A stretch of DNA of 63,353 bases, filler included, from Octopus bimaculoides (GCF_001194135.2; 5 parts of 4 records of this genome joined end to end with filler, not necessarily neighbours in it), one strand, 5' to 3'. Positions 38,846 to 52,707 are shown, counted from the first letter of the whole stretch. Notes: generated by a model from the sequence alone, not told the origin. Made by a program: numbers and translations.

Positions 38846-38945
38846 NNNNNNNNNNNNNNNNNNNNNNNNNNNNNNNNNNNNNNNNNNNNTTAATTAATTA
38901 ANNNNNNNNNNNNNNNNNNNNNNNNNNNNNNNNNNNNNNNNNNNN
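38846..38945. other. Synthetic scaffold-join spacer
   Basis: 44 N + TTAATTAATTAA + 44 N. Confidence 0.97.
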
Positions 38946-38998
<53 letters not shown>

Positions 38999-39021
38999 TA
39001 TAGAGTAGGAAAGATACATAC

Positions 39022-39099
39022 TTATGTGAATGGGATCTGGAGCTTTAAGATGGATGTTTGGGGACAGAACACTTTGAACAGTTATCAAAAATGTACCAC
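39022..39099 (-). CDS. Internal coding exon (phase 1-1): GTFLITVQSVLSPNIHLKAPDPIHI, last strands of Ig-like beta-sandwich
   Basis: Acceptor catttttgtgatttcag, donor GTATGT; in phase; within track ORF 38894..39109. Confidence 0.87.
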
Positions 39100-39345
39100 C
39101 TGAAATCACAAAAATGTTAACATAAGATTAGCTCATATGATTATATATTGAATGCATATTCCTATATAAGTGGTAAATTTATAGAATTTCATGTAACACT
39201 TTAAGAGCTAGTTTGAATCAGTTGGTCAGTTAGTTGGTTGATCACCTTAACTGTCTGCCTCTCACTTTTTTTTAATATAGCAAAATGAGAGAGATCAAAG
39301 CTTGTCTGCAACTAGTATAATATCCGTAACTTAAAGTTACAGATC

Positions 39346-39730
39346 ATCATCATCATCATCATCACTGTTTAACGTCCGCTTTCCATGCTAGCATGGGTTG
39401 AACGATTTGACTGAGGACTGGTGAATCAGATGGCTACACCAGGCTCCAATCTGATTTGGCAGAGTTTCTACAGCTGGATGCCCTTCCTAACACCAACCAC
39501 TCCGAGAGTGTAGTGGGTGCTTTTACATGCCACCGGCATGAAGGCCAGTCACACGGTACTGGCAAAATGGTGTATTTTACGTGCCACCTGCACAGGAGCC
39601 AGTCCAGCGGCACTGGCAACGATCTCGCTCAAATGTCTTTACACGTGCCAGGAAGGCGATGATGGGCATAGGTGCCATCTTGATTTCGCTTGCCCCAACA
39701 GGTCTTCGCAAGTCGAGTTTTGTGTCCAAT
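39346..39730 (-). mobile_element. Retroposon family D with (GAT)n tail (probably RTE-LINE 3' end derived); copies also ~41150-41365(+), 43645-43870(-), 44190-44920(+), 45600-45705(+)
   Basis: Shared gttaggaagggcatccagctgtagaaac...catgctagcatggaaagcggacgttaaac-(gat)n. Confidence 0.8.
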
Positions 39731-39907
39731 GAAAAACGACATTATTATACTAAAACTTTTCTAAAATACTGATTACATTGAAAATTAACAGAAACAAATT
39801 AGTCTATTTGTTAAAAACATAGTCATGAAAAGAGTAAATACTGTGCTTGAATATGAAAAAATTCATCTATAATTTCAAAATTATATTTTTGTTATAGAAA
39901 TACTCAC

Positions 39908-40003
39908 TGGAGAAAATTTTGATATCATCAAATATGGCAACATTCATTTTACTATCTTTACACGGGAGTAGCTGTGATCTGATACAGCCACCAATTGTGG
40001 CAC
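39908..40003 (-). CDS. Internal coding exon (phase 1-1): ATIGGCIRSQLLPCKDSKMNVAIFDDIKIFS(S)
   Basis: Acceptor ctttctttcttcattacag, donor GTGAGT; open and in phase. Confidence 0.9.
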
Positions 40004-40216
40004 CTGTAATGAAGAAAGAAAGCAGAAAAAAACTTATTACATAGTGGAGCTTTATTTAGTTCTAGAATAGCTGAATTATAATAACTGCCCACGACCTTTT
40101 ACAGGGCCTCTAAGACTAATGGGAGGGAGGGAAATATCCTCAAACCAAATAGTCTGAATGTTTTCAATAGAGTGGATTCTACTGAAGAAATTGAAGGTGC
40201 CATATCAAAGCATTAA

Positions 40217-40438
40217 TCCTTTAGTATTCAGATTACTTTATGAAATGTAATCCTTATTTATTCATATTGTTTAGAATTAATCATGCATTATCTTGTAGCT
40301 TTGATATTTTTACTTGATCTGATTGCATATGTTTTCAATGATATTATAGGATAGGTGTGAGAAACTGGAATTGGCTGGTTTAAACATGAAATAGTCAGAA
40401 TATTTTGGCTGGATATGGCTGGTTTAAATACTAAAGGG
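40217..40438. mobile_element. piggyBac-like MITE
   Basis: TTAA|(t)cctttagtatt ... aatactaaaggg|TTAA terminal inverted repeats with TTAA on both sides. Confidence 0.75.
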
Positions 40439-40714
40439 TTAAAGCAGGCAACAGATTAAGTCCATAACTTTCAGTGCTGGCTTTAACCAGTTCTCATAAC
40501 CATCTCCTGAAATATTGATTTCTAACATAGGTACATGATCAGGACAGGGACATAGTTGATTAAATCAACTCCATTACTGGAAGATGAAAAGCAAATTTGC
40601 TAATGATGAAATTTGAACTAAGAATGGAAAAAAAACCACTACTGTGGAATTTAGTTTGATGCTCTACCGATTCTGCCAGCCAACTCCTGAATCATTCACA
40701 ATAGAAAAACTTAC

Positions 40715-40831
40715 CATTAACTATGATTTCTAACATATCTGAATTACCAGCTGACTGCACAATGAAACGAGGCAAGCGAGATCCTTCTTCAGCTTCAGTG
40801 ATTGGAGGTTTCTTCCAAAGCAATGGATATT
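40715..40831 (-). CDS. Internal coding exon (phase 1-1): YPLLWKKPPITEAEEGSRLPRFIVQSAGNSDMLEIIVN(G)
   Basis: Acceptor cttttacatttataattcaacag, donor GTAAGT; open and in phase. Confidence 0.9.
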
Positions 40832-41733
40832 CTGTTGAATTATAAATGTAAAAGATATTCTATAGGATCAAAAATAGAAAGGTTGTACTTAAATATAAGG
40901 CTTCATTTGTAAGGCAGGAGATGTATAGTTTGATTTCTATTATTGGGTCCATTGTTATTTTATAAACTTAAATTGTTTATAAATATACAATGTCTGATGG
41001 TGCCCATGAAGATGTCCAAGTATCACACAAGGTATGGCTGTCCTGTACATAGTAAGGTGAACATGGAATAGTTATCTCTATTCATCATTAGAACCAGTGT
41101 ATGAATAGAATTGTAAGAGAAAACCAAAAGCTTTTAATGCCAGAGCATTGTTGACGCCAGTGTTACCTGACTAGCCCCTGTGCTAGTGGCACATTAAAAG
41201 CACCCATTACACTCTAGGAGTGGGTGGTGTTAGGAAGGGCATCCAGCTGTAGAAACCTTGCCAGATCAGATTGGAGTCTGGTGCAGTCATCTTGTTCACC
41301 AGTCCTCAGTCAAACTGTCCAACCCATGCCAACATGGAAAGCAGATGTTAAACAATTATGATGATGTATGTATGTATATCACTTTTAAGTTATAACTACA
41401 GATTTTCTATAAAATTTAGAACCAACACTAAAAGTTGTGACATTTCGTATACGAATATGCCTATGTAAATGCAAACGCATTGTTTACATAGATGTATTCA
41501 TATATGAAATCCCATAACTTTCAGTGCTGGCTTTAAATTCTATAGCAAATCTGTAGAGATAACTTAAAGTGATTATATCACACTGCTAAGTATTTCCATC
41601 ATTTCTGTCAGCTTAATGACTCACCTTTCTCCACTATTGATTATTTGTCAATTTAACTACAACTTACATTAACTGGAAAAAAAAACAGGATGTCATTTAG
41701 TAAAGTTAACAGGAAAGAAAAATGAAGATTAAC

Positions 41734-41794
41734 CTTTAATTTTCAGAGCTCCTAAATGCATCAGCATGTGTCGGACTTGATCTATATTTGGAAG
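41734..41794 (-). CDS. Internal coding exon (phase 0-1): LPNIDQVRHMLMHLGALKIK(E), C-terminal helix of SAM-like domain
   Basis: Very strong acceptor (T-run then caatttcttgtag), donor GTTAAT; if the donor is skipped the frame ends at GGT TAA (stop 41729-41731). Confidence 0.88.
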
Positions 41795-42435
41795 CTACAA
41801 GAAATTGAAAAAAAAAAAAAAAAAAAAATAGCATGTTAGAATTTACCTGTGCCTCATTTGTGGCAAAAATGCTTGGATGACAACAACAACTAACTTAGAT
41901 GTGGCTACATTTGTAACATGATTTGAAGCAATGGTGTATGAGGATGTGGCTTCAATTAAGGATCTACTTAGATATGAGCATTGTATCATTATTCAAAGCT
42001 AAATTAAACAGACTTGTGATCAAAAGCATTCCAGGCATCTTTCATCTAATGCTACATCAGTCGCTGTGACCTTAGATATTAGCCTGCTTAAAATGATAGG
42101 GTGGATTTAAAGAAAATTTGGATGATGTTTCTAATGATTGATTGACTATAAAGAGGCTCTTTTGATAGAGAATCTAGTTATGTTACTCTGTTATAGCCTA
42201 GAAAATCTAACTCATGTTCTTCAAATTCAACCAGTAAGTATGAATATGCAAGACTTTTCTAAAATTCAGCATCTAACTTTTTACTTTTGTTGTTCTAAAT
42301 CCAAATAGTGAGCTAGTTTCTATGCTAGAGTCTAATTCCAAAATTAGCCCTTTCTTTATAGGAAAGATTCAGAAAATTAAAAAGAGATATACATATATCT
42401 ATACATACAAAGGAAATAAAGAAACAAATAATTAC

Positions 42436-42680
42436 CAGAGTTTTTAAGTCCGATTCTTTCATTTCTAAAAATTTTTTATACGTATTAAAACCCTTTTGCA
42501 CAACCCTGTTAGCAAACTCTTCTGAAAAGCACATCTGTTCAAGTTCAGTGAAAATCCGTTTTTCAGCGCCATATAAATTGATGCCCTGAAAACAGATGCA
42601 GCTTCCCCCGTGGTTGTCAATGATTAGAAGCTGCCAAAAACGGGAGCTGTCGGAGAAGCCATCAAAGATCTGAGCTTTTC
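42436..42680 (-). CDS. Internal coding exon (phase 1-0), 81 codons: end of F5/8C-like domain (SRFWQLLIIDNHGGSCICFQGINLYG) and start of SAM-like domain (LEQMCFSEEFANRVVQKGFNTYKKFLEMKESDLKTL)
   Basis: Acceptor tttttcattttccattcaattcag, donor GTAATT; 245 bp stop-free; includes track ORF 42325..42534. Confidence 0.93.
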
Positions 42681-44454
42681 CTGAATTGAATGGAAAATGA
42701 AAAATATATCAAACATGTGGATGGTTTTACTTTATAATTTATTTACAAAAGTGTGTTACATTTTTCACAGATAATGCTGATTTACTAGATAACAAAGAAG
42801 TCTTGTCTCACTAAAGGATAATAATGGTCCTATAGCAGGATTATTCAACAATCACCTGATGTTGCAATTTGCTAAAATATTACCCACATAATCAACAAAA
42901 TTTGGCCATTCATGACTTCACATGAAACTGGCTCCAACAACAGTACCATCTTTTTGCACCTTCCTCTTTAAGCCTATCTAGCAGTATAAATTCAGCGCAC
43001 TACAAAATAGAGAGCATTGAGAGACAGCTTAGCATTTAACATGTGAGACAGTGAAGAGGAGAGACATCAGACTGGACATAGGAGACGGTAGAAGAGCAGC
43101 AGCTGACAACACAAGCTAATGAACAATAGGTAACTGTAACACAATAACCAGCAGTCAACCTTTTGACTGCTGCTTCAGCCACATCAACCCAAAAACTATT
43201 ATCTCCGAACTCTCATGACATTTTGTCATTCATAGTAACAACAATATTTGTTTTTGTATATGAAAAAAATAAAAAAATTTGTGTATCAAAAATTGCAACA
43301 GACTTCAGTCTTCCACATATAGTTCTTATATTGTGATATGAAGATGTTAGAAACATGAAATTGTTACGATCAAGTTAATAGCAAAGTTCCACCATTTTCT
43401 TTTATTTTCTTTTTTTACTACTTTCAGTTTTTTATTTGTGACCATCTTGGGGGAACTACCTTTGAAGTTTTTAATTGTTTATGTACAAATCCAAGTATTT
43501 TGTCAAGTATTTACTTTATCAATTCTGGAAGAAAAAAGGCAAAACTGACCTGAATGGAATTTTAACACAGAATATAAAGGGGATATGTGTGTGTGTGTAT
43601 ACGTTTACAGTCTTCCTTGATAATCCTTCTTGGTAGCATATCATCATCATTGTCATCATCATCATCATCATCATTTTAACACCCACTTTTTAATCATGCA
43701 TGGGTTGCATGGAGTTTATTGGGACAGATTTTTTACTGTTGGATGCCTTTCCTGTCACCAACCTTCACATGTTTCCAAGCAAGTTAATATTTCCTCCATG
43801 GTAAAACATGGAAGACTAGAAACTAACAACCTAGCTTCTATGAAGATAATGCTCATTTACAACCATCACATGCTATCTAAACAAGGGTACATACAAACAT
43901 ATACATATATAAGTATTACATTCCTTATCACGTTATGTATGTGTGTGTGTGAGTGTATGCATGTATGCGTATGTATATATATATGAATGTTAAACGATGA
44001 TGATGATGATGTATGCATGTATGATGAGATTCTTTCAGTTTCTGTTTCCCAAATCCCCTCATTAGGGGCCAAGCAGTGGAATTGAACTGAAGACAACAAG
44101 GTTGGAAAACAAGCTTCTTAACCACATAGTCATAACTACATCTATCTAAACTAAAATTCTGTTTAAGATCTCTCTAATCACGCTTCTTTGGCAATATCCT
44201 GCCACTTATATTATGAGCTTCAAACCTCAAGGGTATGCCCTGGCACTTGCTGCCATCTGTATATCTCTCTTCCTTTACTTGACCATCCCATTTATATTCT
44301 GATCCCTGCCCCTTGTGAGCATGCCTGGCACTTTGCCACCATCTCTATCCTGCTGTCTTTCACTTTCTCTCTCCTTCTCCTGCACTTCCCTCAGGTTGGG
44401 TAACCATATATCTCCTTTGCGGCAGCACACCGGTTTCTATCCTCATTCCTGATC

Positions 44455-44488
<34 letters not shown>

Positions 44489-45061
44489 GCTGGGTAACCT
44501 TGTACCTCCTCTACAGCAAGACACTCATTTCCGTCTCTCTGTTTCACTATAACCCTTCATCATCTGGCACAAGATTACCTCTTTCAATGACCCCTCCCCT
44601 CTCAAAAGATTTTGTTTTTGTCTTGCAAGGTACTTGGTGACCCTGTCAGTGCAGGTGCCACTTAAAAAGCATCCAGTCCATGCTGTAAAGTGATCGGCGT
44701 GTGGCAGAGAATCCAGCTGTAAAAACTTTGCCAAAACTGATCTCATCTGTGCTTGTGCCACGTATAAAGCACTGAGTCCACTCTGCTGAGTATTTGGTGT
44801 TAGGAAGGGCATCCAGCTGTAAAAATCCTGCCAAAACAGTTCCAGAAGTCTGGTGCCTGGTTCTTGTCAAACTGTCCCTACCATGCCAGCACGAAAAGCA
44901 GATGTTAAACAATAATGATATCATTAATCTAATTAATCTCGGATCAATCCTTCGTGATTAAAAATTTGATAAAACTTTTCCCAAATGATTCTAAAATTGA
45001 TTTAAGTTTTTAAAACATTATTACTCTTTTGATTATTAATATAATTTATCTTATTACTCAC

Positions 45062-45129
45062 CTGGGTCCTTAGGGTCACTACTACCTTCTGATTTACAGG
45101 CAAAATGAACTACAGTTGACCAGGGGCCT
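45062..45129 (-). CDS. Internal coding exon (phase 2-1): GPWSTVVHFACKSEGSSDPKDP(G)
   Basis: Acceptor ttatttatcttttacag, donor GTGAGT; phase-compatible on both sides. Confidence 0.88.
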
Positions 45130-45868
45130 CTGTAAAAGATAAATAATACATATCAATATATAAAAATATAGCTACATACACACACTAAAGGCTGAACCTC
45201 ATGGAAGAGGTGACAAAGACTACAACAAAAGACGAGAAACTGTGCTGAAAATATTTGTCCAGCTTATGTTATGCATGGAAAAGTAGACATAAATTGATAC
45301 TGATGATCATCACGATAATTACAATTTAATAATTGTAATTCCAAGAGTGGTGTCAGTGGATAAGTTACCATTTGTGTCATGTGCTCAGTATATTAGCAGA
45401 ACATATTAACTATATAGTCCTATCAAGAAGTGACACCAAACCTTAGAATTATCTAATCAGATTCTATCAAAGATGTTTAGTTGTTATTATCTCTTGTAGC
45501 TAAATGGAACATTATTTATTGATGCTATGAAGCTATTGCAAGAATAGTCAACCCAAGTTTTGTTTCCTCGAGTTTAGGCCATTTGGGTCTTGTATGATGT
45601 TAATAAATTGACTGTAGCTGGCTCTGGCTTTGCCAGTTCCTGTCAAGCTGTCTAACCTGCGCTAGCATGGAAACACTAAACACTAAATGTTGATGATGAT
45701 GATGATAATGATGCCATTCTCAATTTTGATCACGATGGACATTTGAATGCCGCCACATTCAGTGTCCAAGCAATTATAGGTAATAATACAAGAGAACCAA
45801 AGCTCACAAATCAAAGATCAAAACTGACATATGCCACACTACTAATATGATTATTAGTTGACATATAA

Positions 45869-46069
45869 AGGTGATGAGCTCACGGAATTGTTAGCATGCT
45901 GGAAAAAATGCTTAGTGGCATTTCATCTATCTTTACATTCTGAGTTCAAATTCTGCCAAGGTTGACTTAGCTTTTCATCAGTCAAATAAACACCAGTTAA
46001 GTACTGGGGTTGATGTAATGACTGCCTTTTCTCTTCCAAAATTTCAGATCTTGTGCCTAGTGCAGAAAA
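45869..46069 (+). mobile_element. SINE family B copy with 20-bp target-site duplication
   Basis: gattattagttgacatataa at 45849-45868 and 46070-46089; CpGs in the body are mostly mutated. Confidence 0.88.
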
Positions 46070-46100
46070 GATTATTAGTTGACATATAAGTAGAGCTGCA

Positions 46101-46408
46101 CAGTGCTTCTCAAACTATCTGATGTGGCGTACCAGCAGTTATTTTTTCCAATGTGCCAGGGACCAGTAATATTTCTTAGTAATATTAATTTATACTAGAA
46201 ACAATATATATAATGAATATAATAAAAGTTGACAATTTTTTTTATCTTATATTTATTTTATAAACAAATAATACAATATTACATAAGCATTTTATAATGT
46301 TTCTTTCTTTTCTGGAAACTTGTTGCGTACCAGCAGCTGATGGCTCATGGACTGGCACCACTCCACAGACTGGAACCGGTCCATGGACCACCACTTGGAG
46401 TAGCAGTG
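46101..46408. mobile_element. hAT/Charlie-like MITE
   Basis: Ends cagtgcttctcaa ... ttggagtagcagtg; 8-bp TSD only partly preserved. Confidence 0.5.
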
Positions 46409-46672
46409 GTGTAGCACGCTCTGGTGCAAGTATTCTGGTTTAAGGAAGAGAATTTCTTGTCTTCTTCTCACCAGTTGCAGAGACACTGACAAGAGACAAG
46501 CATTGCTCTTTCTACCTCTGCCTTAAAAAAAAAATCTAGTTCAATGCCTAAGAATAATTTTAAAATGCTACTGATCAATAATTTTATATTCAGAAATGTT
46601 CAGAGCAACAAATATTGTTATAAAAAATACCAGTCAATTCCCATTTCATTATGGTGAAACATTTCAACTTAC

Positions 46673-46726
46673 TCAATTGTATAGCCTTTCCGTAGTTCAA
46701 AATTTTTGACCATATTTGGACTGTCC
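46673..46726 (-). CDS. Internal coding exon (phase 2-2) of uncharacterised F5/8C-like/SAM-like/Ig-like gene: DSPNMVKNFELRKGYTI(E)
   Basis: Acceptor tttctaatatttttcag and donor GTAAGT; open and in phase with the next exon, giving the discoidin-like segment VKNFEL...GPW. Confidence 0.8.
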
Positions 46727-48105
46727 CTGAAAAATATTAGAAATATTCTGTACTTATTACAAAAAAGAGAGTAAACTAGAGATGTTGCATCACAAAACAA
46801 ATCAGAAAATTCATGACACACAAGATATGTTTCAGTTCAGTAAATAAAATATTGACCAAAGTTTGTTCTTTGTTCAGAACTGCAGTGACATAAAAAGAAC
46901 CACAATATCAAGAGTTTTAAAAAAATGAAACTACACTTATCTAAAACTGTTTTAATGCAATAATAGTAAATCTAACTGAGAAAGATGGATCTGGGTTCAT
47001 AAGGCGTCATGTTTGAAGCTGAAACTTATATAACTCATAAACACACTCATACAGGAATAATTTTTTATTTGTTTTTACTGCATGTATGAGAGCTGCTTTT
47101 ATCATGTAGTATTATTATACATATTTTGGTACAGAATTTATCAGGAAAGTCATGATTAAATGAACAATTTTACTTCATAGAATCACAAAACTGATCACTG
47201 TTGAGTTCAGTAAATAAAATATGGATAAAAGTTTGTTCTGCTTTGTTCGTGGCATAAAAGAGTCACAATATCAAGGGATAAAAAAAAAATGAAAATTTCA
47301 TTTGGCAAACTGTTAATAATGGTGAATCTGATGGAGAATTGGATTATGGTTGCTTAAGGTGTACTTTCAACAACAATCCTATAACTTATACACAGAAGAA
47401 ATATGTTTTAATCAGTCATCTGCTACCAATGTGCAAAAGAGATATATTTATGGAGTTGGTTAATACTCAGGTAGGTTTCTATACACAGTTGCTACACAGC
47501 ATATTTACCTGAAGTCCTATGATCTAAAAGAAAGCAATTTAATAATATACATAAAAACAGAACAAAGAAGTCTCTTATCAGAATTCTGGGATGTTAGGGA
47601 AAATGTTAGAACTTTTTACAACACAATGTAATTTAGTTGTATTTGGTTAGACTAGCAATAAATAGAATGGATTAGGCTCAATCAAAGAAGTAAATTTCTT
47701 TTAAAATATAACAATTTTGAAAATTTAGCAAGTATAGACAGATGTTAAAAAAAGTAAGTAAATAAATGCAGAACTATTTGGTTTGGAAAGGTTTCAATTA
47801 TTGGAATGAATGTAAAAAAATTAAACAATAAAATACATTTAAATTGAATAACTTTAATAAAAATCTGATATCTACCATTTCTCAATAAAATTATTTTGGT
47901 TTGGTATGAAATTAGGGTAATTATTCAATAAATTTGATTAAAAAGAAAATTCTTTCTGTTTTCTAAATTTCATCTAGGTCAAAACTTTTAAAGGTGTTTT
48001 TAGGTGCTGTATGGAATGTATATATGTATATATACAGACACACACACAAATACATATNNNNNNNNNNNNNNNNNNNNNNNNNNNNNNNNNNNNNNNNNNN
48101 NNNNN

Positions 48106-48146
<41 letters not shown>

Positions 48147-49611
48147 GACTATGTATATGTGTGTGTATATAAATGTATGTGTATGCAATTTTGAATTTGA
48201 TATATTTAACTAAGCAAGTGAGATATTTTAAATAGGTAAAATGTTACAATTAAAACATACATGGATATGACAACAATAATTGAAAGATTTTACTGTACAA
48301 TAACAATGAATCTCCATGTCAAACAGAAAACTGGGATGACAAATGACAAACTTTTGAAAAGAAATGTTGCATCATGACATAAAAAAAAAAAACAGGATGT
48401 TTGTATTCAGAGATGACAACACCAAAAATAGGCATGCACCATTTGAATAACATTATATAGACAACAAAAAACATGAATTTTATTCTCTATATGTAGATAA
48501 GCTGCCAAATCCACCTGCATATCAATAAGCTGCCTATTTCATTCACATGCTGGATTCATTTACATTGATATAAAGTGCTTGTCTCATCTACATAAAAATG
48601 GGTAGAATAATTCACCTGCAATTCACCTATATAAGAGATAAGCTACATAATCCACCCACATAAAGAGGGAGAAACAGTTCCTTAGAATTCTCCTGCAATA
48701 TTGTACTGATTAAAATAAAGAAGATTTAAAATCTTTAGTGAAGTCTAATATAATTGAAGGTGAATTAAGGTAGTCATAAGATTATTAGTAAAGAACTAAC
48801 AGATGTATGTCTATTTAAATAATTATTTCCATTTACCCTCTCTTTTAAAATGCATTACTTACACACACATGTGTAATAAAGGTGCCCCTAGGCAGTTGTT
48901 CTGTTTGCCAGAAATAGCAAACAAATCTCTCTTAAATCCAAACAGCTGTCTTAAAATGTATAATTAAAAAAAAAAGGATAGGGTGGTCATAACTGGCATG
49001 TCTTTCATCATAGGTCTACTCAGCCAAGACACATCTTTATCAACAACACACATCATCATCTTTCTACAACTTAATTATTTATTTCTCAATCTATTTCTAA
49101 TTATTCTAACACTATCAAGCTGCTGCCCAAAACTTTATTCTGAATCACACATGATGTGACATAAATAAATCATTAGAAGAACTACATCAAAGTCTGCTTG
49201 ATAAAGACATGTTTTATCATAAACAGCCCTAAATATAAGGAGAAAAAGTAGAAGTAAAAAGAATAGGTGATGCTTAGTCTCTTAACTTTTTGTGTCATTA
49301 GGGCACTACTAAAGATTTAATCTTTATGTTCTGATACAAAGAATGATGTACTGGGGTAGTATTTCATTGCTTTATCCATTTTCACAGCAGGATTTAACCC
49401 CAGTACTGCAACATAACAATAATATAGAGTTCCTTATACTTACAAGGATAAATTGTACCTACTAATGGTGCCTATCATTTACATTTAGGTAGACTGAACT
49501 AGCAAGCTTCAAGTGTTAGGTGTAGAGGAAATTGTTCACAGCTCAGTTCTGGTCACAGAATACAAACCAACAAACCAGTCAAAGTATATTTTAGGTCAAT
49601 GCTTAACTGAC

Positions 49612-49684
49612 CCAGTCAGCTGTATCTCCAAAGTACAGGTGGAATATAACATACAAATAACTATGTAGGAGGTGGACAATGCAA
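49612..49684 (-). CDS. Candidate linking exon (phase 1-2): (V)ALSTSYIVICMLYSTCTLEIQLT(G)
   Basis: Best phase 1-2 candidate found between 49798 and 46726; pyrimidine-rich acceptor region, donor GTCAGT; strand pattern fits the WIxxDL...IxL segment of discoidin-like domains. Confidence 0.42.
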
Positions 49685-49797
49685 CTATTTGGGACAGAAA
49701 ATCTTATCAAGTGTAGGAAAATGGACAACATTGAGAGATGGGTTAAGAAAGGAAGTTACTGATTATGTTGGACGTGGACTAAATATCAAACACTCAC

Positions 49798-49831
49798 CTG
49801 CTGACCAAAAACAGCTAGTGTTCTCTATCAT
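49798..49831 (-). CDS. Probable upstream exon (phase 0-1): MIENTSCFWSA
   Basis: Donor GTGAGT, acceptor ttattaacag; only one frame is open; FW-S fits the N-terminal part of discoidin-like domains. Confidence 0.6.
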
Positions 49832-50964
49832 CTGTTAATAATTATAGTAAGTACTAACATTTTATAAATCAGCACCGACAATCTCGGTCACAGGTAAAGT
49901 TGGAAATATTACACTAAGAGATTTTTCATGGGAAACATCAACAATATAGGCATTAACCAAATATTTTGAGTCTAGCAAGCCACTACTTTATTTTAATTTT
50001 CCAAATAAATTAATAAGTACAAAATAAATTTTAAAAAATGAAACAAATTGGGATTTTTAGCTTTTATGCACTTCACATCATATTTGTAGCATGCATACGT
50101 TTATTTAACACTGCTCTGCAAATGAAACATTAAGTCCAAATCTATTAAGGCCTATGGCAGGGGAAATAAAAAGGGAGATCAAATGTGTTGATACTTAAAT
50201 TGCTTTAGAGAAGAATTCATTTCAGTTATTCTATTAAACACAGACACATCAAAGGATTGGCAAGATTGGATGACCTTTTGGTAAAATGGATGCCTATATA
50301 TTCATGCAATCTATTTCTGATATAAAGCTGAAAAAAGTTGATAATCTCAAAACAAAATTTTATTTTTGTATGTCAAATCTAAAACTATCTGTAACACATC
50401 ATGGAACTTCAAATTATCACATCTGAAATATTTTTGTCAGAAAATGCAACACATATTTCAGGGAGGAGAATAAAGAAGAACTAAAACAGGTAAAAATTTC
50501 AGGTTATTTATGTTTATCTTGTGTGAAAGAACTTCTTTGTTGTTGCTCAACCCACTCAGTGTAGTAACCAATATTCTCTTAAACTCTTTATATATTTAAA
50601 AAAGGGTACTTCATGTTTTATGTAACGAGAAATATTGGTTTCAAATTTTGACACAAGGCCAGAAATTTCAAGGAAGGGGCTAAGTTGATTATATTGACCC
50701 CAGTGCTTGACTGGTACTTATTTTATCAACCCTGAAAAGATGAAAGGCAAAGTTGACCTTGGCAGAATTTGAACCCAGAACATAAAGACAGACAAACATG
50801 TTGCTCAGCATGCTAATGATTCTGCCAGCTCACTACCCTATATGTAACTAAATATTAAGACAGTATATATATTCTGCAAGGACGACAAGCAAGTTTGCCA
50901 AGGTTAAAAGTGTTGATTGAAAGCTTTGATTCATCAGTTAACATCCATATTATAAAACTATTAA

Positions 50965-51180
50965 CCCTTTAGGATTTAAACCGACCATATTCAGCCCAAA
51001 TATTCTTTTGCAATTTATGTTCAATCTGACCAGATCCGGCCTCTTACACCTACCCAGCAATGTCATTCTAAAAATAAACAGTTGTATCATGAAGATCTCA
51101 AACTTATTAGGTAGTGCATGATTAACTGAAAAGAAGGTGAAAAAGTAAGGTTTAAATTTGACAGAGTAATATGAATTGCA
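50965..51180. mobile_element. Second copy of piggyBac-like MITE (right end eroded)
   Basis: TTAA|ccctttaggatttaaacc; inverted homology to the 40217-40438 body. Confidence 0.7.
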
Positions 51181-52161
51181 GCAGAGTTGACTGAGGCTGC
51201 ATAACAACAGTAGTAACAATAGTCCCTGTCAAAGTGTCTACACAACATTGAAATAATTGTTGAAGCCTAAAATTAAGATCTTGGCTAGAGCAACTATGCA
51301 GTTACTTCTTAGAGGATGTTACAAATTACACCCATGTTTCATTAATAGATTAACCAGGAACTCGTTCAAATATCGGTACCTTTATCTTCTGAATATAAAA
51401 TGTTTGACATTTTTCATAAATCATAATAAAGATATTTTACATTGACTGTGAAGATGGCATCGATTAAACAACATTTCTTGAGTCAATATTCTTCATCTAG
51501 ATGGCCTTCTTAATGCTTTTGCACATTTAATCACTTCTGAACATTTTGTTCATTGGATCCATAAATATGTCTCTGTTGCTGAAATGGTGTCAATGTAAAG
51601 AGACATGGCAATAAACACAAACACGCATACCTGCACCTATGCACAAAAACAAACAAACACACACACACACATATATATGTATCAGCATATAATATATATA
51701 TATATACACACACACACATATATATGAGAGATATTGGTATCCAGAAGACCCAAGGTGGTAGGTAACGCTATGGAAGTGCTATGGAAGGACCGTAATTAAA
51801 CTCTCAGTTTGATAATGATATGAGTGAGGAGTCTAATGTGGGTCTTGTATGAGTGTGTATATGTTAAATAGAATGGGACAACAAAGCCAAGGGTGTGTGG
51901 AATTTTCAGGACATTTATAAAGAGCAAGTTAGAAAGTTGGGCTGGATTTGGCCTGTTTAAATGCTAATGGGTTAATAGTTTTATAACATGGATGTTAACT
52001 GATGAATTGAAGCTTTCAATCAACACTTTTAACCTTTCTCTTTATAAATGTCCTGAAAATTCCACACAGCCTTGGCTTTATTGTCTCATTCTATTCAACA
52101 CACACATACACACATACAAATATATATATATCATCATCATCATCATCATCTGATGATGATG

Positions 52162-52246
<85 letters not shown>

Positions 52247-52343
52247 CAGGGAACTAGACAGTACCAGCATTGTTAGAAATACAAACATGGTCATTACACA
52301 TATGGTGACACAAGTATCTTTAGCTCTCAGCCACAATACTCAC

Positions 52344-52397
52344 TGACGAGAACTAAGTGTTTATCACAGGGTTCGAAATCATGCAATATCAGTACAT
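52344..52397 (-). CDS. Candidate upstream exon (phase 1-1): (x)VLILHDFEPCDKHLVLV
   Basis: Acceptor tgattttgcag, donor GTGAGT, 54 bp with one open frame; connection to the gene is not proven. Confidence 0.35.
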
Positions 52398-52604
52398 CTG
52401 CAAAATCATTTGCTATTTTTACTCACTATTGGCTTTTCTGTTTACTTGTTTCCTCAAATTCACCAGTGTGTATAAGTAATAACTGTGGTTTTTGAATCAT
52501 TTTGACTCTTATGTCTAGCAATGCTGGAACTATCCAGTACCCTGATTATAAATTAATAATTTTACCTTTATGATTATTTTATGCTTGCTAGCCACATATT
52601 ATTA

Positions 52605-52646
<42 letters not shown>

Positions 52647-52648
52647 AA

Positions 52649-52696
<48 letters not shown>

Positions 52697-52707
52697 TAAT
52701 AATAATA

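What the first reader, a model, noticed from the sequence alone, without database searches (positions are those of the whole stretch)
39022..49831. Hidden multi-exon gene with an unusual discoidin-like + SAM-like + Ig-like architecture
Seen: seven consecutive minus-strand GT-AG exons (54, 68, 245, 61, 117, 96, 78 bp) splice in phase to 239 stop-free codons, nearly all missed by the ORF track. Two more exons probably extend it upstream. Knowledge: the motifs FW-S...VKNFEL...GPW...RFWQLLIIDNHGG...ICFQGINLYG fit galactose-binding/F5-8 type C (discoidin, APC10/IFT25-like) folds; LEQMCFSEEFANRVVQKGFNTYKKFLEMKESDLKTLLPNIDQVRHMLMHL has SAM helical spacing; the last ~95 aa alternate like an Ig-like beta-sandwich. 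Inference: I cannot assign it to a named gene. With no signal peptide seen, it could be an uncharacterised cytosolic adaptor joining a ligand-sensing domain to a polymerising SAM domain.
Basis: partly seen in the sequence, partly recalled or inferred. Interest (0 to 1): 0.78.

Follow-up and report, generated by a model that had tools for sequence, protein, structure and literature searches.

The report
Annotated octopus ankyrin-discoidin-SAM scaffold gene
The seven exons are real, but they are the back part of an already annotated, functionally unstudied octopus gene for a 662-residue cytosolic protein (ankyrin repeats, discoidin-like domain, SAM domain, beta-sandwich), a family found from single-celled relatives of animals to molluscs.

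Summary
The seven minus-strand GT-AG exons exist exactly as listed. They splice to 239 stop-free codons that are a perfect substring (aa 390-628) of RefSeq XP_029657190.1 (Octopus sinensis LOC115231265, 'uncharacterized protein', 662 aa). The same holds for the O. bimaculoides and O. vulgaris orthologues. Against the O. vulgaris locus the exons differ at 3 of 719 bases, all synonymous, versus 5.9% outside them, and all 14 splice sites are kept.

The gene is therefore not hidden. The piece holds seven consecutive coding exons of at least 18. The ankyrin-repeat half and the first 70 residues of the discoidin domain lie upstream of the piece. The last exon lies downstream.

The real preceding exon lies about 1.4 kb beyond the piece, and the candidates have the wrong phase and no family similarity. 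The assembly gap is an intronic microsatellite.

The domain guesses hold. Discoidin/IFT25/APC10-like fold and SAM are shown by family profiles and a pLDDT 94 model. The Ig-like call is plausible but unproven.

The family is uncharacterised and was found in ichthyosporeans, choanoflagellates, sponges, placozoans and spiralians. The most likely role is a non-enzymatic cytosolic scaffold. Interest is modest.

The parts
46673..46726 (-). Coding exon, 54 bp (protein aa 390-407, DSPNMVKNFELRKGYTIE). It encodes middle strands of the discoidin-like domain. Its first base completes the Trp codon begun in the upstream exon that lies outside the piece.
   Evidence: AG/GT bounded. 100% identical to P0001. 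0 differences from O. vulgaris, splice sites conserved.
45062..45129 (-). Coding exon, 68 bp (aa 407-430). It holds the nearly invariant GPW motif of the family.
   Evidence: GPW is nearly invariant in alignment A1.
42436..42680 (-). Coding exon, 245 bp (aa 430-511). The first half (to about 42562) is the end of the discoidin-like domain with the conserved NHGG motif. The second half (about 42561-42436) encodes SAM helices 1-4.
   Evidence: 2 synonymous differences from O. vulgaris. It lies in the longest open stretch of the piece. Domain limits come from the model and the profile hits.
41734..41794 (-). Coding exon, 61 bp (aa 512-532): last SAM helix.
40715..40831 (-). Coding exon, 117 bp (aa 532-571): first strands of the C-terminal beta-sandwich.
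39908..40003 (-). Coding exon, 96 bp (aa 571-603): middle strands of the beta-sandwich, including the invariant Phe of AIFDDI.
   Evidence: 1 synonymous difference from O. vulgaris.
39022..39099 (-). Coding exon, 78 bp (aa 603-628): last strands of the beta-sandwich. A GT donor follows at 39021. The final coding exon (34 aa, C-terminal helix) lies beyond the piece's edge.
   Evidence: In O. vulgaris the last exon lies about 1.76 kb further on.
46727..52707 (-). 3' part of the roughly 9-kb intron that precedes the 54-bp exon.
   Evidence: Collinear alignment to the O. vulgaris intron. Candidate exons rejected.

Best explanation
The seven exons are consecutive internal coding exons (the seven before the last) of an annotated octopus gene: LOC115231265 in O. 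sinensis and LOC106877910 in O. bimaculoides.

The gene has at least 18 coding exons and spans about 112 kb. Its 662-residue protein has no signal peptide and no membrane segment. Its parts, in order, are:
- ankyrin repeats (aa ~60-290);
- a discoidin/galactose-binding-like beta-sandwich (aa ~322-469);
- one SAM domain (aa ~470-532);
- an all-beta, probably Ig-like, domain (aa ~535-629);
- a conserved C-terminal helix (aa ~635-661).

The piece encodes aa 390-628: the back half of the discoidin-like domain, the SAM domain and the beta-sandwich.

Shown here: the gene identity, the splice structure, purifying selection, the discoidin-like and SAM folds, and a family that spans Holozoa.

Inferred: the protein is a non-enzymatic cytosolic scaffold. 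In this reading the ankyrin groove and the discoidin-like domain bind partners. The SAM domain, closest to the Eph/SHIP2/ANKS1/Caskin type, mediates SAM-SAM pairing or oligomerisation. The three C-terminal domains and the terminal helix form one rigid module rather than beads on a string. I put the identity at about 0.97 and the scaffold mechanism at about 0.5.
For: - Identity: the spliced translation is an exact substring of P0001 (XP_029657190.1), P0062 (XP_014782447.1) and P0064.
- Gene size: the O. sinensis gene spans 112 kb. The exon map on the O. vulgaris locus L001 is.
- Selection: 3 synonymous differences in 719 exon bases against 5.9% elsewhere, with splice sites conserved.
- Ankyrin repeats: Pfam E = 9e-44 on P0001.
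- Discoidin-like domain: PF00754 in 21 of 28 members, best E = 2.2e-14, up to 52.6 bits. Foldseek TMt is 0.72-0.78 to CBM32 and IFT25 and 0.58-0.66 to APC10.
- SAM: the family profile matches SHIP2/EphA2, Caskin and ANKS1 SAM structures at E = 9e-14 to 1e-10. SAM_1 is found in 14 of 28 members.
- Model: the 348-residue model has mean pLDDT 94.3 and pTM 0.80, with five SAM helices, about nine strands in the last domain and a 27-residue terminal helix.
- Location: no hydrophobic segment and no signal peptide.
Against: - The octopus sequence alone gives no Pfam hit for the window-encoded part. On the full protein it gives only 18.3 bits for F5_F8_type_C, below the cut-off. The domain calls therefore rest on the family and on the model.
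- No experiment, expression data or interaction data were available.
- A scaffold role is inferred from domain content only. The discoidin-like domain could bind a sugar, a lipid or a peptide.
- The inter-domain packing rests on one AlphaFold model built from 28 sequences.
Confidence: 0.85

Rival explanations
1. One reading: a stand-alone discoidin + SAM + Ig adaptor. Its coding region would start at the ATG of exon 49831-49798 and continue through 49684-49612 into the seven exons, for example as an internal-promoter isoform that lacks the ankyrin repeats.
For: - The two candidates have AG/GT borders and join the 54-bp exon in phase.
- The first begins with ATG and contains CFW.
- The 400-bp block around them has only 4 differences from O. 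vulgaris, against a regional rate of 3.0% (P = 0.007).
Against: - The candidates are absent from the annotated proteins of three octopus species, which use a 103-bp exon upstream of the piece.
- The 36-residue peptide scores -0.2 bits against the family profile, versus 45.8 bits for the real exon. 38 of 2000 shuffles do as well.
- There is no DNA similarity to the real exon.
- Spliced after either real upstream exon, the first candidate gives an immediate stop.
- The hypothetical 309-residue isoform is not in the 15-billion-protein collection.
- It would lack the first strands of the domain.
- The conservation P-value does not survive correction for the roughly 30 windows scanned.
Confidence: 0.04
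2. It is the octopus orthologue of ANKS1A/ANKS1B (Odin/AIDA-1), as the O. vulgaris, Mytilus and Trichoplax annotations name it.
For: - Third-party names are ANKS1 or ANKS1A/1B.
- The N-terminus MGKE..L.KA resembles that of ANKS1 and Caskin (recalled from memory, not tested).
- There are N-terminal ankyrin repeats.
- The SAM profile matches ANKS1A/B SAM structures at E = 1e-10 to 1e-8.
Against: - There is one SAM domain, not a tandem pair.
- No PTB/PID domain is found in any of the six full-length members scanned.
- A discoidin-like domain and a beta-sandwich are present that ANKS1 lacks.
- SHIP2, EphA2 and Caskin SAMs match as well or better.
Confidence: 0.05
3. The discoidin-like domain acts like an APC10/DOC domain. 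The protein would then be a substrate- or degron-recognition subunit tied to a ubiquitin ligase.
For: - Foldseek matches APC10 in APC/C structures and the HECTD3 DOC domain (TMt 0.58-0.66 for APC10).
- The profile gives a weak hit to HECTD3 (E = 0.66).
- The conserved NHGG loop before the last strands resembles the APC10 'NHQNGRD' stretch (recalled from memory, a lead only).
Against: - No Pfam ANAPC10 hit in any member.
- CBM32 and IFT25 match better in fold.
- No ligase domain or ligase-binding motif was identified.
Confidence: 0.1
4. It is a ciliary protein whose discoidin-like domain works like IFT25.
For: - IFT25 is among the best fold matches (TMt 0.72-0.76).
- It is also a weak profile match (E = 0.005).
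- Many holders of the family are ciliated or flagellated (choanoflagellates, sponges, Trichoplax, spiralians).
Against: - The family is present in the ichthyosporeans Sphaeroforma and Amoebidium, which to my knowledge lack flagella.
- No vertebrate member was seen among the sources looked up, although vertebrates are ciliated.
- IFT25 is a single-domain protein.
Confidence: 0.05

Closest known systems
ANKS1A/ANKS1B (Odin, AIDA-1) and Caskin-1/2: ankyrin-SAM scaffold proteins
   Same: N-terminal block of ankyrin repeats followed by SAM. The SAM domain is of the same sequence type (profile E = 1e-12 to 1e-8 to their SAM structures). Cytosolic and non-enzymatic. Automatic pipelines give the family their name.
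   Different: One SAM domain instead of a tandem pair. No PTB (ANKS1) or SH3 (Caskin) domain. It has a discoidin-like domain between the ankyrin repeats and SAM, plus a C-terminal beta-sandwich and helix.
IFT25 (HSPB11) and APC10/DOC domains: cytosolic galactose-binding-like beta-sandwiches
   Same: Same fold. TMt is 0.72-0.76 to IFT25 and 0.58-0.66 to APC10. Intracellular setting. Weak profile match to IFT25 (E = 0.005).
   Different: Here the fold is one domain inside a 662-residue multi-domain protein. No Pfam ANAPC10 hit. Partners (IFT27, the APC/C) are not implied.
F5/8 type C (discoidin) and CBM32 carbohydrate-binding modules
   Same: Best sequence-family match (PF00754 in 21 of 28 members) and best fold matches (TMt up to 0.78).
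   Different: The classical members are extracellular or secreted and bind lipid or glycan. This protein has no signal peptide. The octopus member falls below the Pfam cut-off (18.3 against 28.2 bits).
Muskelin (MKLN1)
   Same: A cytosolic protein with a discoidin domain joined to other protein-interaction domains. Its discoidin domain is among the fold matches (TMt 0.58-0.67).
   Different: Muskelin continues with LisH/CTLH and kelch repeats. It has no ankyrin repeats and no SAM.
EphA2 and SHIP2 SAM domains
   Same: Top sequence matches of the family's SAM profile (E = 9e-14). The choanoflagellate members keep the LPGHRKK motif of this SAM type (alignment; sequences).
   Different: The octopus SAM has diverged at that motif (LPNIDQVRHM) and gives no SAM hit by itself. 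Partner choice is unknown.

Membership tests
F5/8 type C (discoidin), Pfam PF00754 | Sequence match to the family HMM above the curated cut-off (28.2 bits) | tested here: inconclusive
   The octopus protein scores 18.3 bits, E = 0.0026, below the cut-off. The window-encoded part alone gives no hit. Orthologous family members pass: 52.6 and 41.8 bits, and 21 of 28 at E <= 1e-3.
F5/8 type C / galactose-binding domain-like fold | Jelly-roll beta-sandwich superposable on solved members | tested here: met
   Model pLDDT 94. Foldseek probability 1.0, TMt 0.72-0.78 to CBM32, chitobiase C-domain and IFT25.
F5/8 type C (classical discoidin domains) | Extracellular or secreted context (signal peptide) | tested here: not met
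   Hydrophilic N-terminus. The highest 19-residue hydropathy is 1.37, so there is no signal peptide or membrane segment.
APC10/DOC domain, Pfam PF03256 | Sequence match to the ANAPC10 HMM | tested here: not met
   No ANAPC10 hit at E <= 1 in six full-length members, nor at 1e-3 in 28 members. Only fold-level similarity (TMt 0.58-0.66).
IFT25 | Small single-domain protein that pairs with IFT27 | tested here: not met
   The domain sits inside a 662-residue protein. The profile match is weak (E = 0.005). Binding to IFT27 cannot be tested here.
SAM domain, Pfam PF00536/PF07647 | Sequence match to SAM profiles or solved SAM domains | tested here: met
   Family profile against PDB: E = 9e-14 to 1e-8 to SHIP2/EphA2, Caskin and ANKS1 SAMs. 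SAM_1 in 14 of 28 members, best 6e-10. The octopus sequence alone gives no hit.
SAM domain | Five-helix bundle of about 65 residues | tested here: met
   Helices at model residues 156-164, 169-177, 183-187, 191-197 and 201-218, pLDDT about 95.
Polymerising SAM domains | Head-to-tail self-association through the mid-loop and end-helix surfaces | not testable with these tools
   This needs biophysics (SEC-MALS, AUC, EM) on the purified domain.
Ig-like beta-sandwich | Seven to nine strands in two sheets, superposable on Ig-like domains | tested here: inconclusive
   About nine strands over aa 535-629 at pLDDT above 90. The profile of the domain hits only Ig domains of a receptor tyrosine kinase fragment, at E = 0.088. 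No Pfam family matches. The domain could not be searched alone by fold.
ANKS1A/B (Odin, AIDA-1) | N-terminal ankyrin repeats | tested here: met
   Pfam Ank_2 E = 9e-44 on P0001, aa ~60-290, encoded outside the piece.
ANKS1A/B (Odin, AIDA-1) | Tandem SAM domains followed by a PTB domain | tested here: not met
   One SAM domain only, and no PTB/PID hit in six full-length members.
Caskin | SH3 domain and tandem SAM after the ankyrin repeats | tested here: not met
   No SH3 hit and a single SAM domain.

The most novel reading that the evidence does not exclude
The gene represents an old, unstudied holozoan protein family. Members were found in ichthyosporeans, Corallochytrium, choanoflagellates, sponges, placozoans and spiralians. 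No vertebrate, cnidarian or credible arthropod member was seen among the sources looked up.

In this family a cytosolic discoidin/DOC-like ligand-binding domain is rigidly coupled to a SAM domain, an Ig-like domain and a terminal helix behind an ankyrin array. That would be a signalling or assembly module with no studied counterpart.

A smaller add-on: the unusually conserved intronic block at 50007-49608 may hold a poison exon. Exon 49831-49798 spliced after the real upstream exon creates TG|A, a stop codon.
Probability: 0.2. Interest if true: 0.5.

Novelty: new variant of a known kind. Interest (0 to 1): 0.3.

Why it matters
As a gene discovery it does not matter, because RefSeq already models this gene in two octopus species.

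What is worth recording is the protein family. Its domain order is ankyrin repeats, a cytosolic discoidin-like domain, SAM, a beta-sandwich and a terminal helix. I found that order in no studied protein and in no paper. The protein is nearly identical among three octopus species, with one substitution in 662 residues. The family reaches back to unicellular relatives of animals and seems to be missing from the usual model animals, which would explain why nobody has studied it.

If it is a scaffold of the ANKS1/Caskin type with an added ligand-binding domain, it could show how SAM-based signalling scaffolds were built before animals arose.

The case also has a practical lesson. Three genome annotations label family members 'ANKS1', which the domain content does not support. 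The O. vulgaris annotation also splits the gene in two.

Tried and rejected
- Pfam on the 239-residue translation gave no hit even at E <= 10.
- The word-index protein search found nothing with the 239 residues and only two bivalve-type members with the family profile. It did not return the identical RefSeq protein, so its silence is not informative.
- PDB phmmer with the single sequence gave only E = 1.9 to a RIBEYE fragment.
- Single-sequence AlphaFold failed, with pLDDT 38.
- A systematic search for an in-phase exon between 49797 and 46727 gave 48 candidates, none convincing. The best-looking pair (49831-49798 plus 49684-49612) was later rejected on several grounds: comparison with the orthologues, phase, the profile score of -0.2 bits and a DNA alignment below the null mean.
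- Rfam and tRNA scans of the piece, and a permissive Rfam scan of the conserved block, found nothing.
- Six other ORFs in the introns have no credible Pfam hit; the only match was Herpes_LMP1 at E = 0.061, 13 bits, below its cut-off.
- The profile of the C-terminal domain against PDB and Pfam gave no significant match.
- The ankyrin half against PDB gave only generic ankyrin-repeat proteins.
- Literature searches for the locus names and for the domain combination found nothing relevant.
- The O. sinensis locus DNA could not be fetched because the gene spans more than 100 kb.

Full report
**The observation.** I read the piece on the minus strand and spliced the seven listed exons. The exons are 46726-46673 (54 bp), 45129-45062 (68), 42680-42436 (245), 41794-41734 (61), 40831-40715 (117), 40003-39908 (96) and 39099-39022 (78). 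Every one is preceded by AG and followed by GT. Read from the second base, the 719 bases give 239 codons without a stop. The 6.7% stop frequency on this strand makes that about 6e-8 likely for a fixed frame. The 245-bp exon sits in the longest open stretch of the whole piece. Prokaryote-style ORF calling touches only two of the seven exons.

**The assembly gap.** The window aligns collinearly with the orthologous Octopus vulgaris locus (L001). Window 51630-48106 matches L001 25940-29491, and window 48057-46440 matches L001 29621-31250. The 48 N therefore stand for about 129 bp, which in O. vulgaris is a pure (TA)n(CA)n(TA)n microsatellite. The gap lies inside an intron, upstream of the first of the seven exons, and touches no reading frame.

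**What the gene is.** Pfam, a word-index protein search and a PDB sequence search with the 239 residues found nothing. A full HMMER scan of 1.84 billion representative proteins found 61 relatives. The best is P0001, which is RefSeq XP_029657190.1, 'uncharacterized protein LOC115231265' of Octopus sinensis, 662 aa.
- The 239-residue translation is an exact substring (aa 390-628) of this protein, of the O. bimaculoides orthologue XP_014782447.1 and of an O. vulgaris fragment.
- The O. sinensis gene spans 112 kb.
- Mapping P0001 onto the O. vulgaris locus shows at least 17 coding exons for aa 105-662, plus at least one more for aa 1-104.
- The window holds the seven exons before the last one. The final exon (34 residues and the stop) lies about 1.76 kb further on, beyond the piece's lower edge.

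Against O. vulgaris the seven exons differ at 3 of 719 positions, all synonymous. The rest of the piece differs at 668 of 11307 aligned positions (binomial P = 1.6e-15). All 14 splice dinucleotides are conserved. The exons are real, used and under strong purifying selection. The gene is not hidden: it is already modelled in public annotation, without a function.

**The two extra upstream exons.**
- Among 48 in-phase candidates between it and the 54-bp exon, only 49684-49612 looked like beta strands. Together they would add 36 residues.
- The orthologues do not use them. The true preceding exon (ATGACAAC…TTTTTGGATG, 103 bp, encoding (N)DNCSFWVIPSIQQAWTVLDLQHEHIITGIKVFG(W)) is at L001 21746-21848. 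That is about 1.4 kb upstream of where the window's piece begins to align.
- The exon before that ends in phase 1. Joined to 49831 it reads AAT GAT AGA GAA CAC TAG, a stop. Joined after the true exon, which ends in TG, the first base A makes TGA.
- The 36-residue peptide scores -0.2 bits against the family profile, against 45.8 bits for the real exon's peptide. 38 of 2000 shuffles do as well.
- The DNA shows no similarity to the real exon beyond GTTTTTGG.
- The hypothetical isoform is not in the 15-billion-protein collection.
- The 15-bp candidate 47523-47509 has a stop in the required frame.

I reject these exons as coding parts of the gene. One thing remains unexplained. The 400 bp around them (50007-49608) has only 4 differences from O. 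vulgaris, against 3.0% in the surrounding 3 kb (P = 0.007) and 5.9% overall. After allowing for about 30 windows scanned this is borderline. A conserved regulatory element or a poison exon is possible but untested. Rfam finds nothing there.

**Domains.**
- Ankyrin repeats. Pfam on full-length members shows N-terminal ankyrin repeats (E = 9e-44 on the octopus protein). They are encoded entirely outside the piece.
- C-terminal half. I aligned 28 members over this half (A1). F5_F8_type_C is found in 21 of 28 (best 2.2e-14) and SAM_1 in 14 of 28 (best 6e-10). The octopus protein itself reaches only 18.3 bits for F5_F8_type_C and gives nothing for SAM.
- SAM. The A1 profile matches solved SAM domains of SHIP2/EphA2, Caskin-1/2 and ANKS1A/B at E = 9e-14 to 1e-8. 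It also matches a CBM32 module (7.6e-4) and IFT25 (0.005) weakly.
- Model. AlphaFold2 with A1 gave a model of aa 315-662 with mean pLDDT 94.3 and pTM 0.80. It shows a beta-sandwich to model residue 155, five helices at 156-218, about nine strands at 221-315 and a 27-residue helix at 321-347.
- Fold search. Foldseek against the PDB returns CBM32 modules, chitobiase C-domains and IFT25 at TMt 0.72-0.78, with muskelin's discoidin domain, APC10 and HECTD3 lower.
- C-terminal beta domain. It has no Pfam match. Its only PDB profile hit is at E = 0.088, to the E-F strand region of Ig domains. I could not search it alone by fold, so 'Ig-like' stays plausible but unproven.
- Location. No member has a signal peptide or a membrane-like segment.

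**The family.** The sources I could look up are as follows.
- Cephalopods, bivalves and gastropods.
- The brachiopod Lingula and a rotifer.
- Trichoplax.
- The sponges Sycon and Ephydatia.
- Four choanoflagellates.
- Corallochytrium and the ichthyosporeans Amoebidium and Sphaeroforma.

Most full-length members are 620-680 residues long and share one architecture. No vertebrate or cnidarian member was among them. The only arthropod entry, a beetle protein on a 292-kb contig, may be contamination. About half of the 61 hits could not be looked up, so the absences are provisional. The three octopus proteins differ at a single residue. No paper mentions the loci or the domain combination.

**How it most likely works.** What is shown is a soluble multi-domain protein made only of interaction domains. 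The pTM of 0.80 over three domains and a helix suggests that the C-terminal half forms one compact unit. What is inferred is a scaffold or adaptor role.
- The ankyrin groove and the discoidin-like domain would each hold a partner or ligand. In the discoidin-like domain the nearly invariant GPW and NHGG motifs mark the conserved part.
- The SAM domain, of the Eph/SHIP2/ANKS1/Caskin type, would pair with another SAM or self-associate.
- The terminal helix, with its invariant F…L motif, would dock within the module or onto a partner.

I give this about even odds. A DOC-like degron or ligand receptor tied to a ubiquitin ligase (about 0.1) and an IFT25-like ciliary role (about 0.05) are the main functional rivals.

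**Comparison and membership.** The protein works most like the ankyrin-SAM scaffolds ANKS1A/B and Caskin, and three annotation pipelines name it ANKS1. It fails their defining features: it has one SAM rather than a tandem pair, no PTB and no SH3. It should not be filed there. It belongs to the galactose-binding-like fold class and to the SAM superfamily at the domain level. As a whole protein it is an undescribed architecture.

**Verdict.** The exon observation is right and the domain reading is largely right. The claim of a hidden gene, the two extra exons and the omission of the ankyrin half are wrong. The gene itself is already in the databases. The family is an unstudied variant of the ankyrin-SAM scaffold theme. 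Interest is modest (0.3).

Noticed in passing
Exon-like segment 49831-49798 has a consensus GTGAGT donor. It would create a stop codon if spliced after either real upstream exon, so a conserved poison exon or a regulatory element is possible.
   Followed up: partly
window 39354-39525, 41195-41366, 44646-44919: Copies of a SINE-like interspersed repeat lie in three introns, in both orientations (172 nt at 88% complementarity between the first two). Locally they raise G+C to about 0.42-0.44.
   Followed up: no
window 50900-50999 / 51937-52036, 51850-51937 / 52025-52112, 40397-40442 / 50961-51006: MITE-like inverted-repeat elements that share a TTAACCCTTTAG-type end, with copies in two different introns.
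   Followed up: no
L001 (O. vulgaris OX597815.1) 1-47272: The O. vulgaris annotation splits this gene into two models (104 aa and 509 aa), names both 'Ankyrin repeat and SAM domain-containing 1A', and gives the second a different C-terminal end (…LMLHKCIEKYLKSKDKNI). The canonical last exon is nevertheless present at L001 45636-45737.
   Followed up: partly
protein P0022 (XP_063933892.1, Zophobas morio): This is the only arthropod hit of the family: a 337-aa protein on a 292-kb contig. It may be contamination from a unicellular holozoan or another organism.
   Followed up: no
window 41821-42085 versus L001 36590-40426: O. vulgaris has about 3.8 kb in the intron after the 245-bp exon where the window has about 260 bp. 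This is a large species-specific insertion or deletion. Several other intron stretches (46203-46440, 39344-39743) do not align.
   Followed up: no
window 38946-39000 and 52600-52707: The piece ends in microsatellites on both sides: (CA)n at the low end and (TAA)n/(ATT)n at the high end. The 71-aa ORF 38894-39109 listed by the ORF tool runs from the last exon into the artificial linker and is not real.
   Followed up: yes
tool behaviour: The word-index protein search did not return the RefSeq protein that is 100% identical to the 239-residue query. The exhaustive HMMER search found that protein at E = 1.8e-161. A negative from the word-index tool should not be read as absence.
   Followed up: yes
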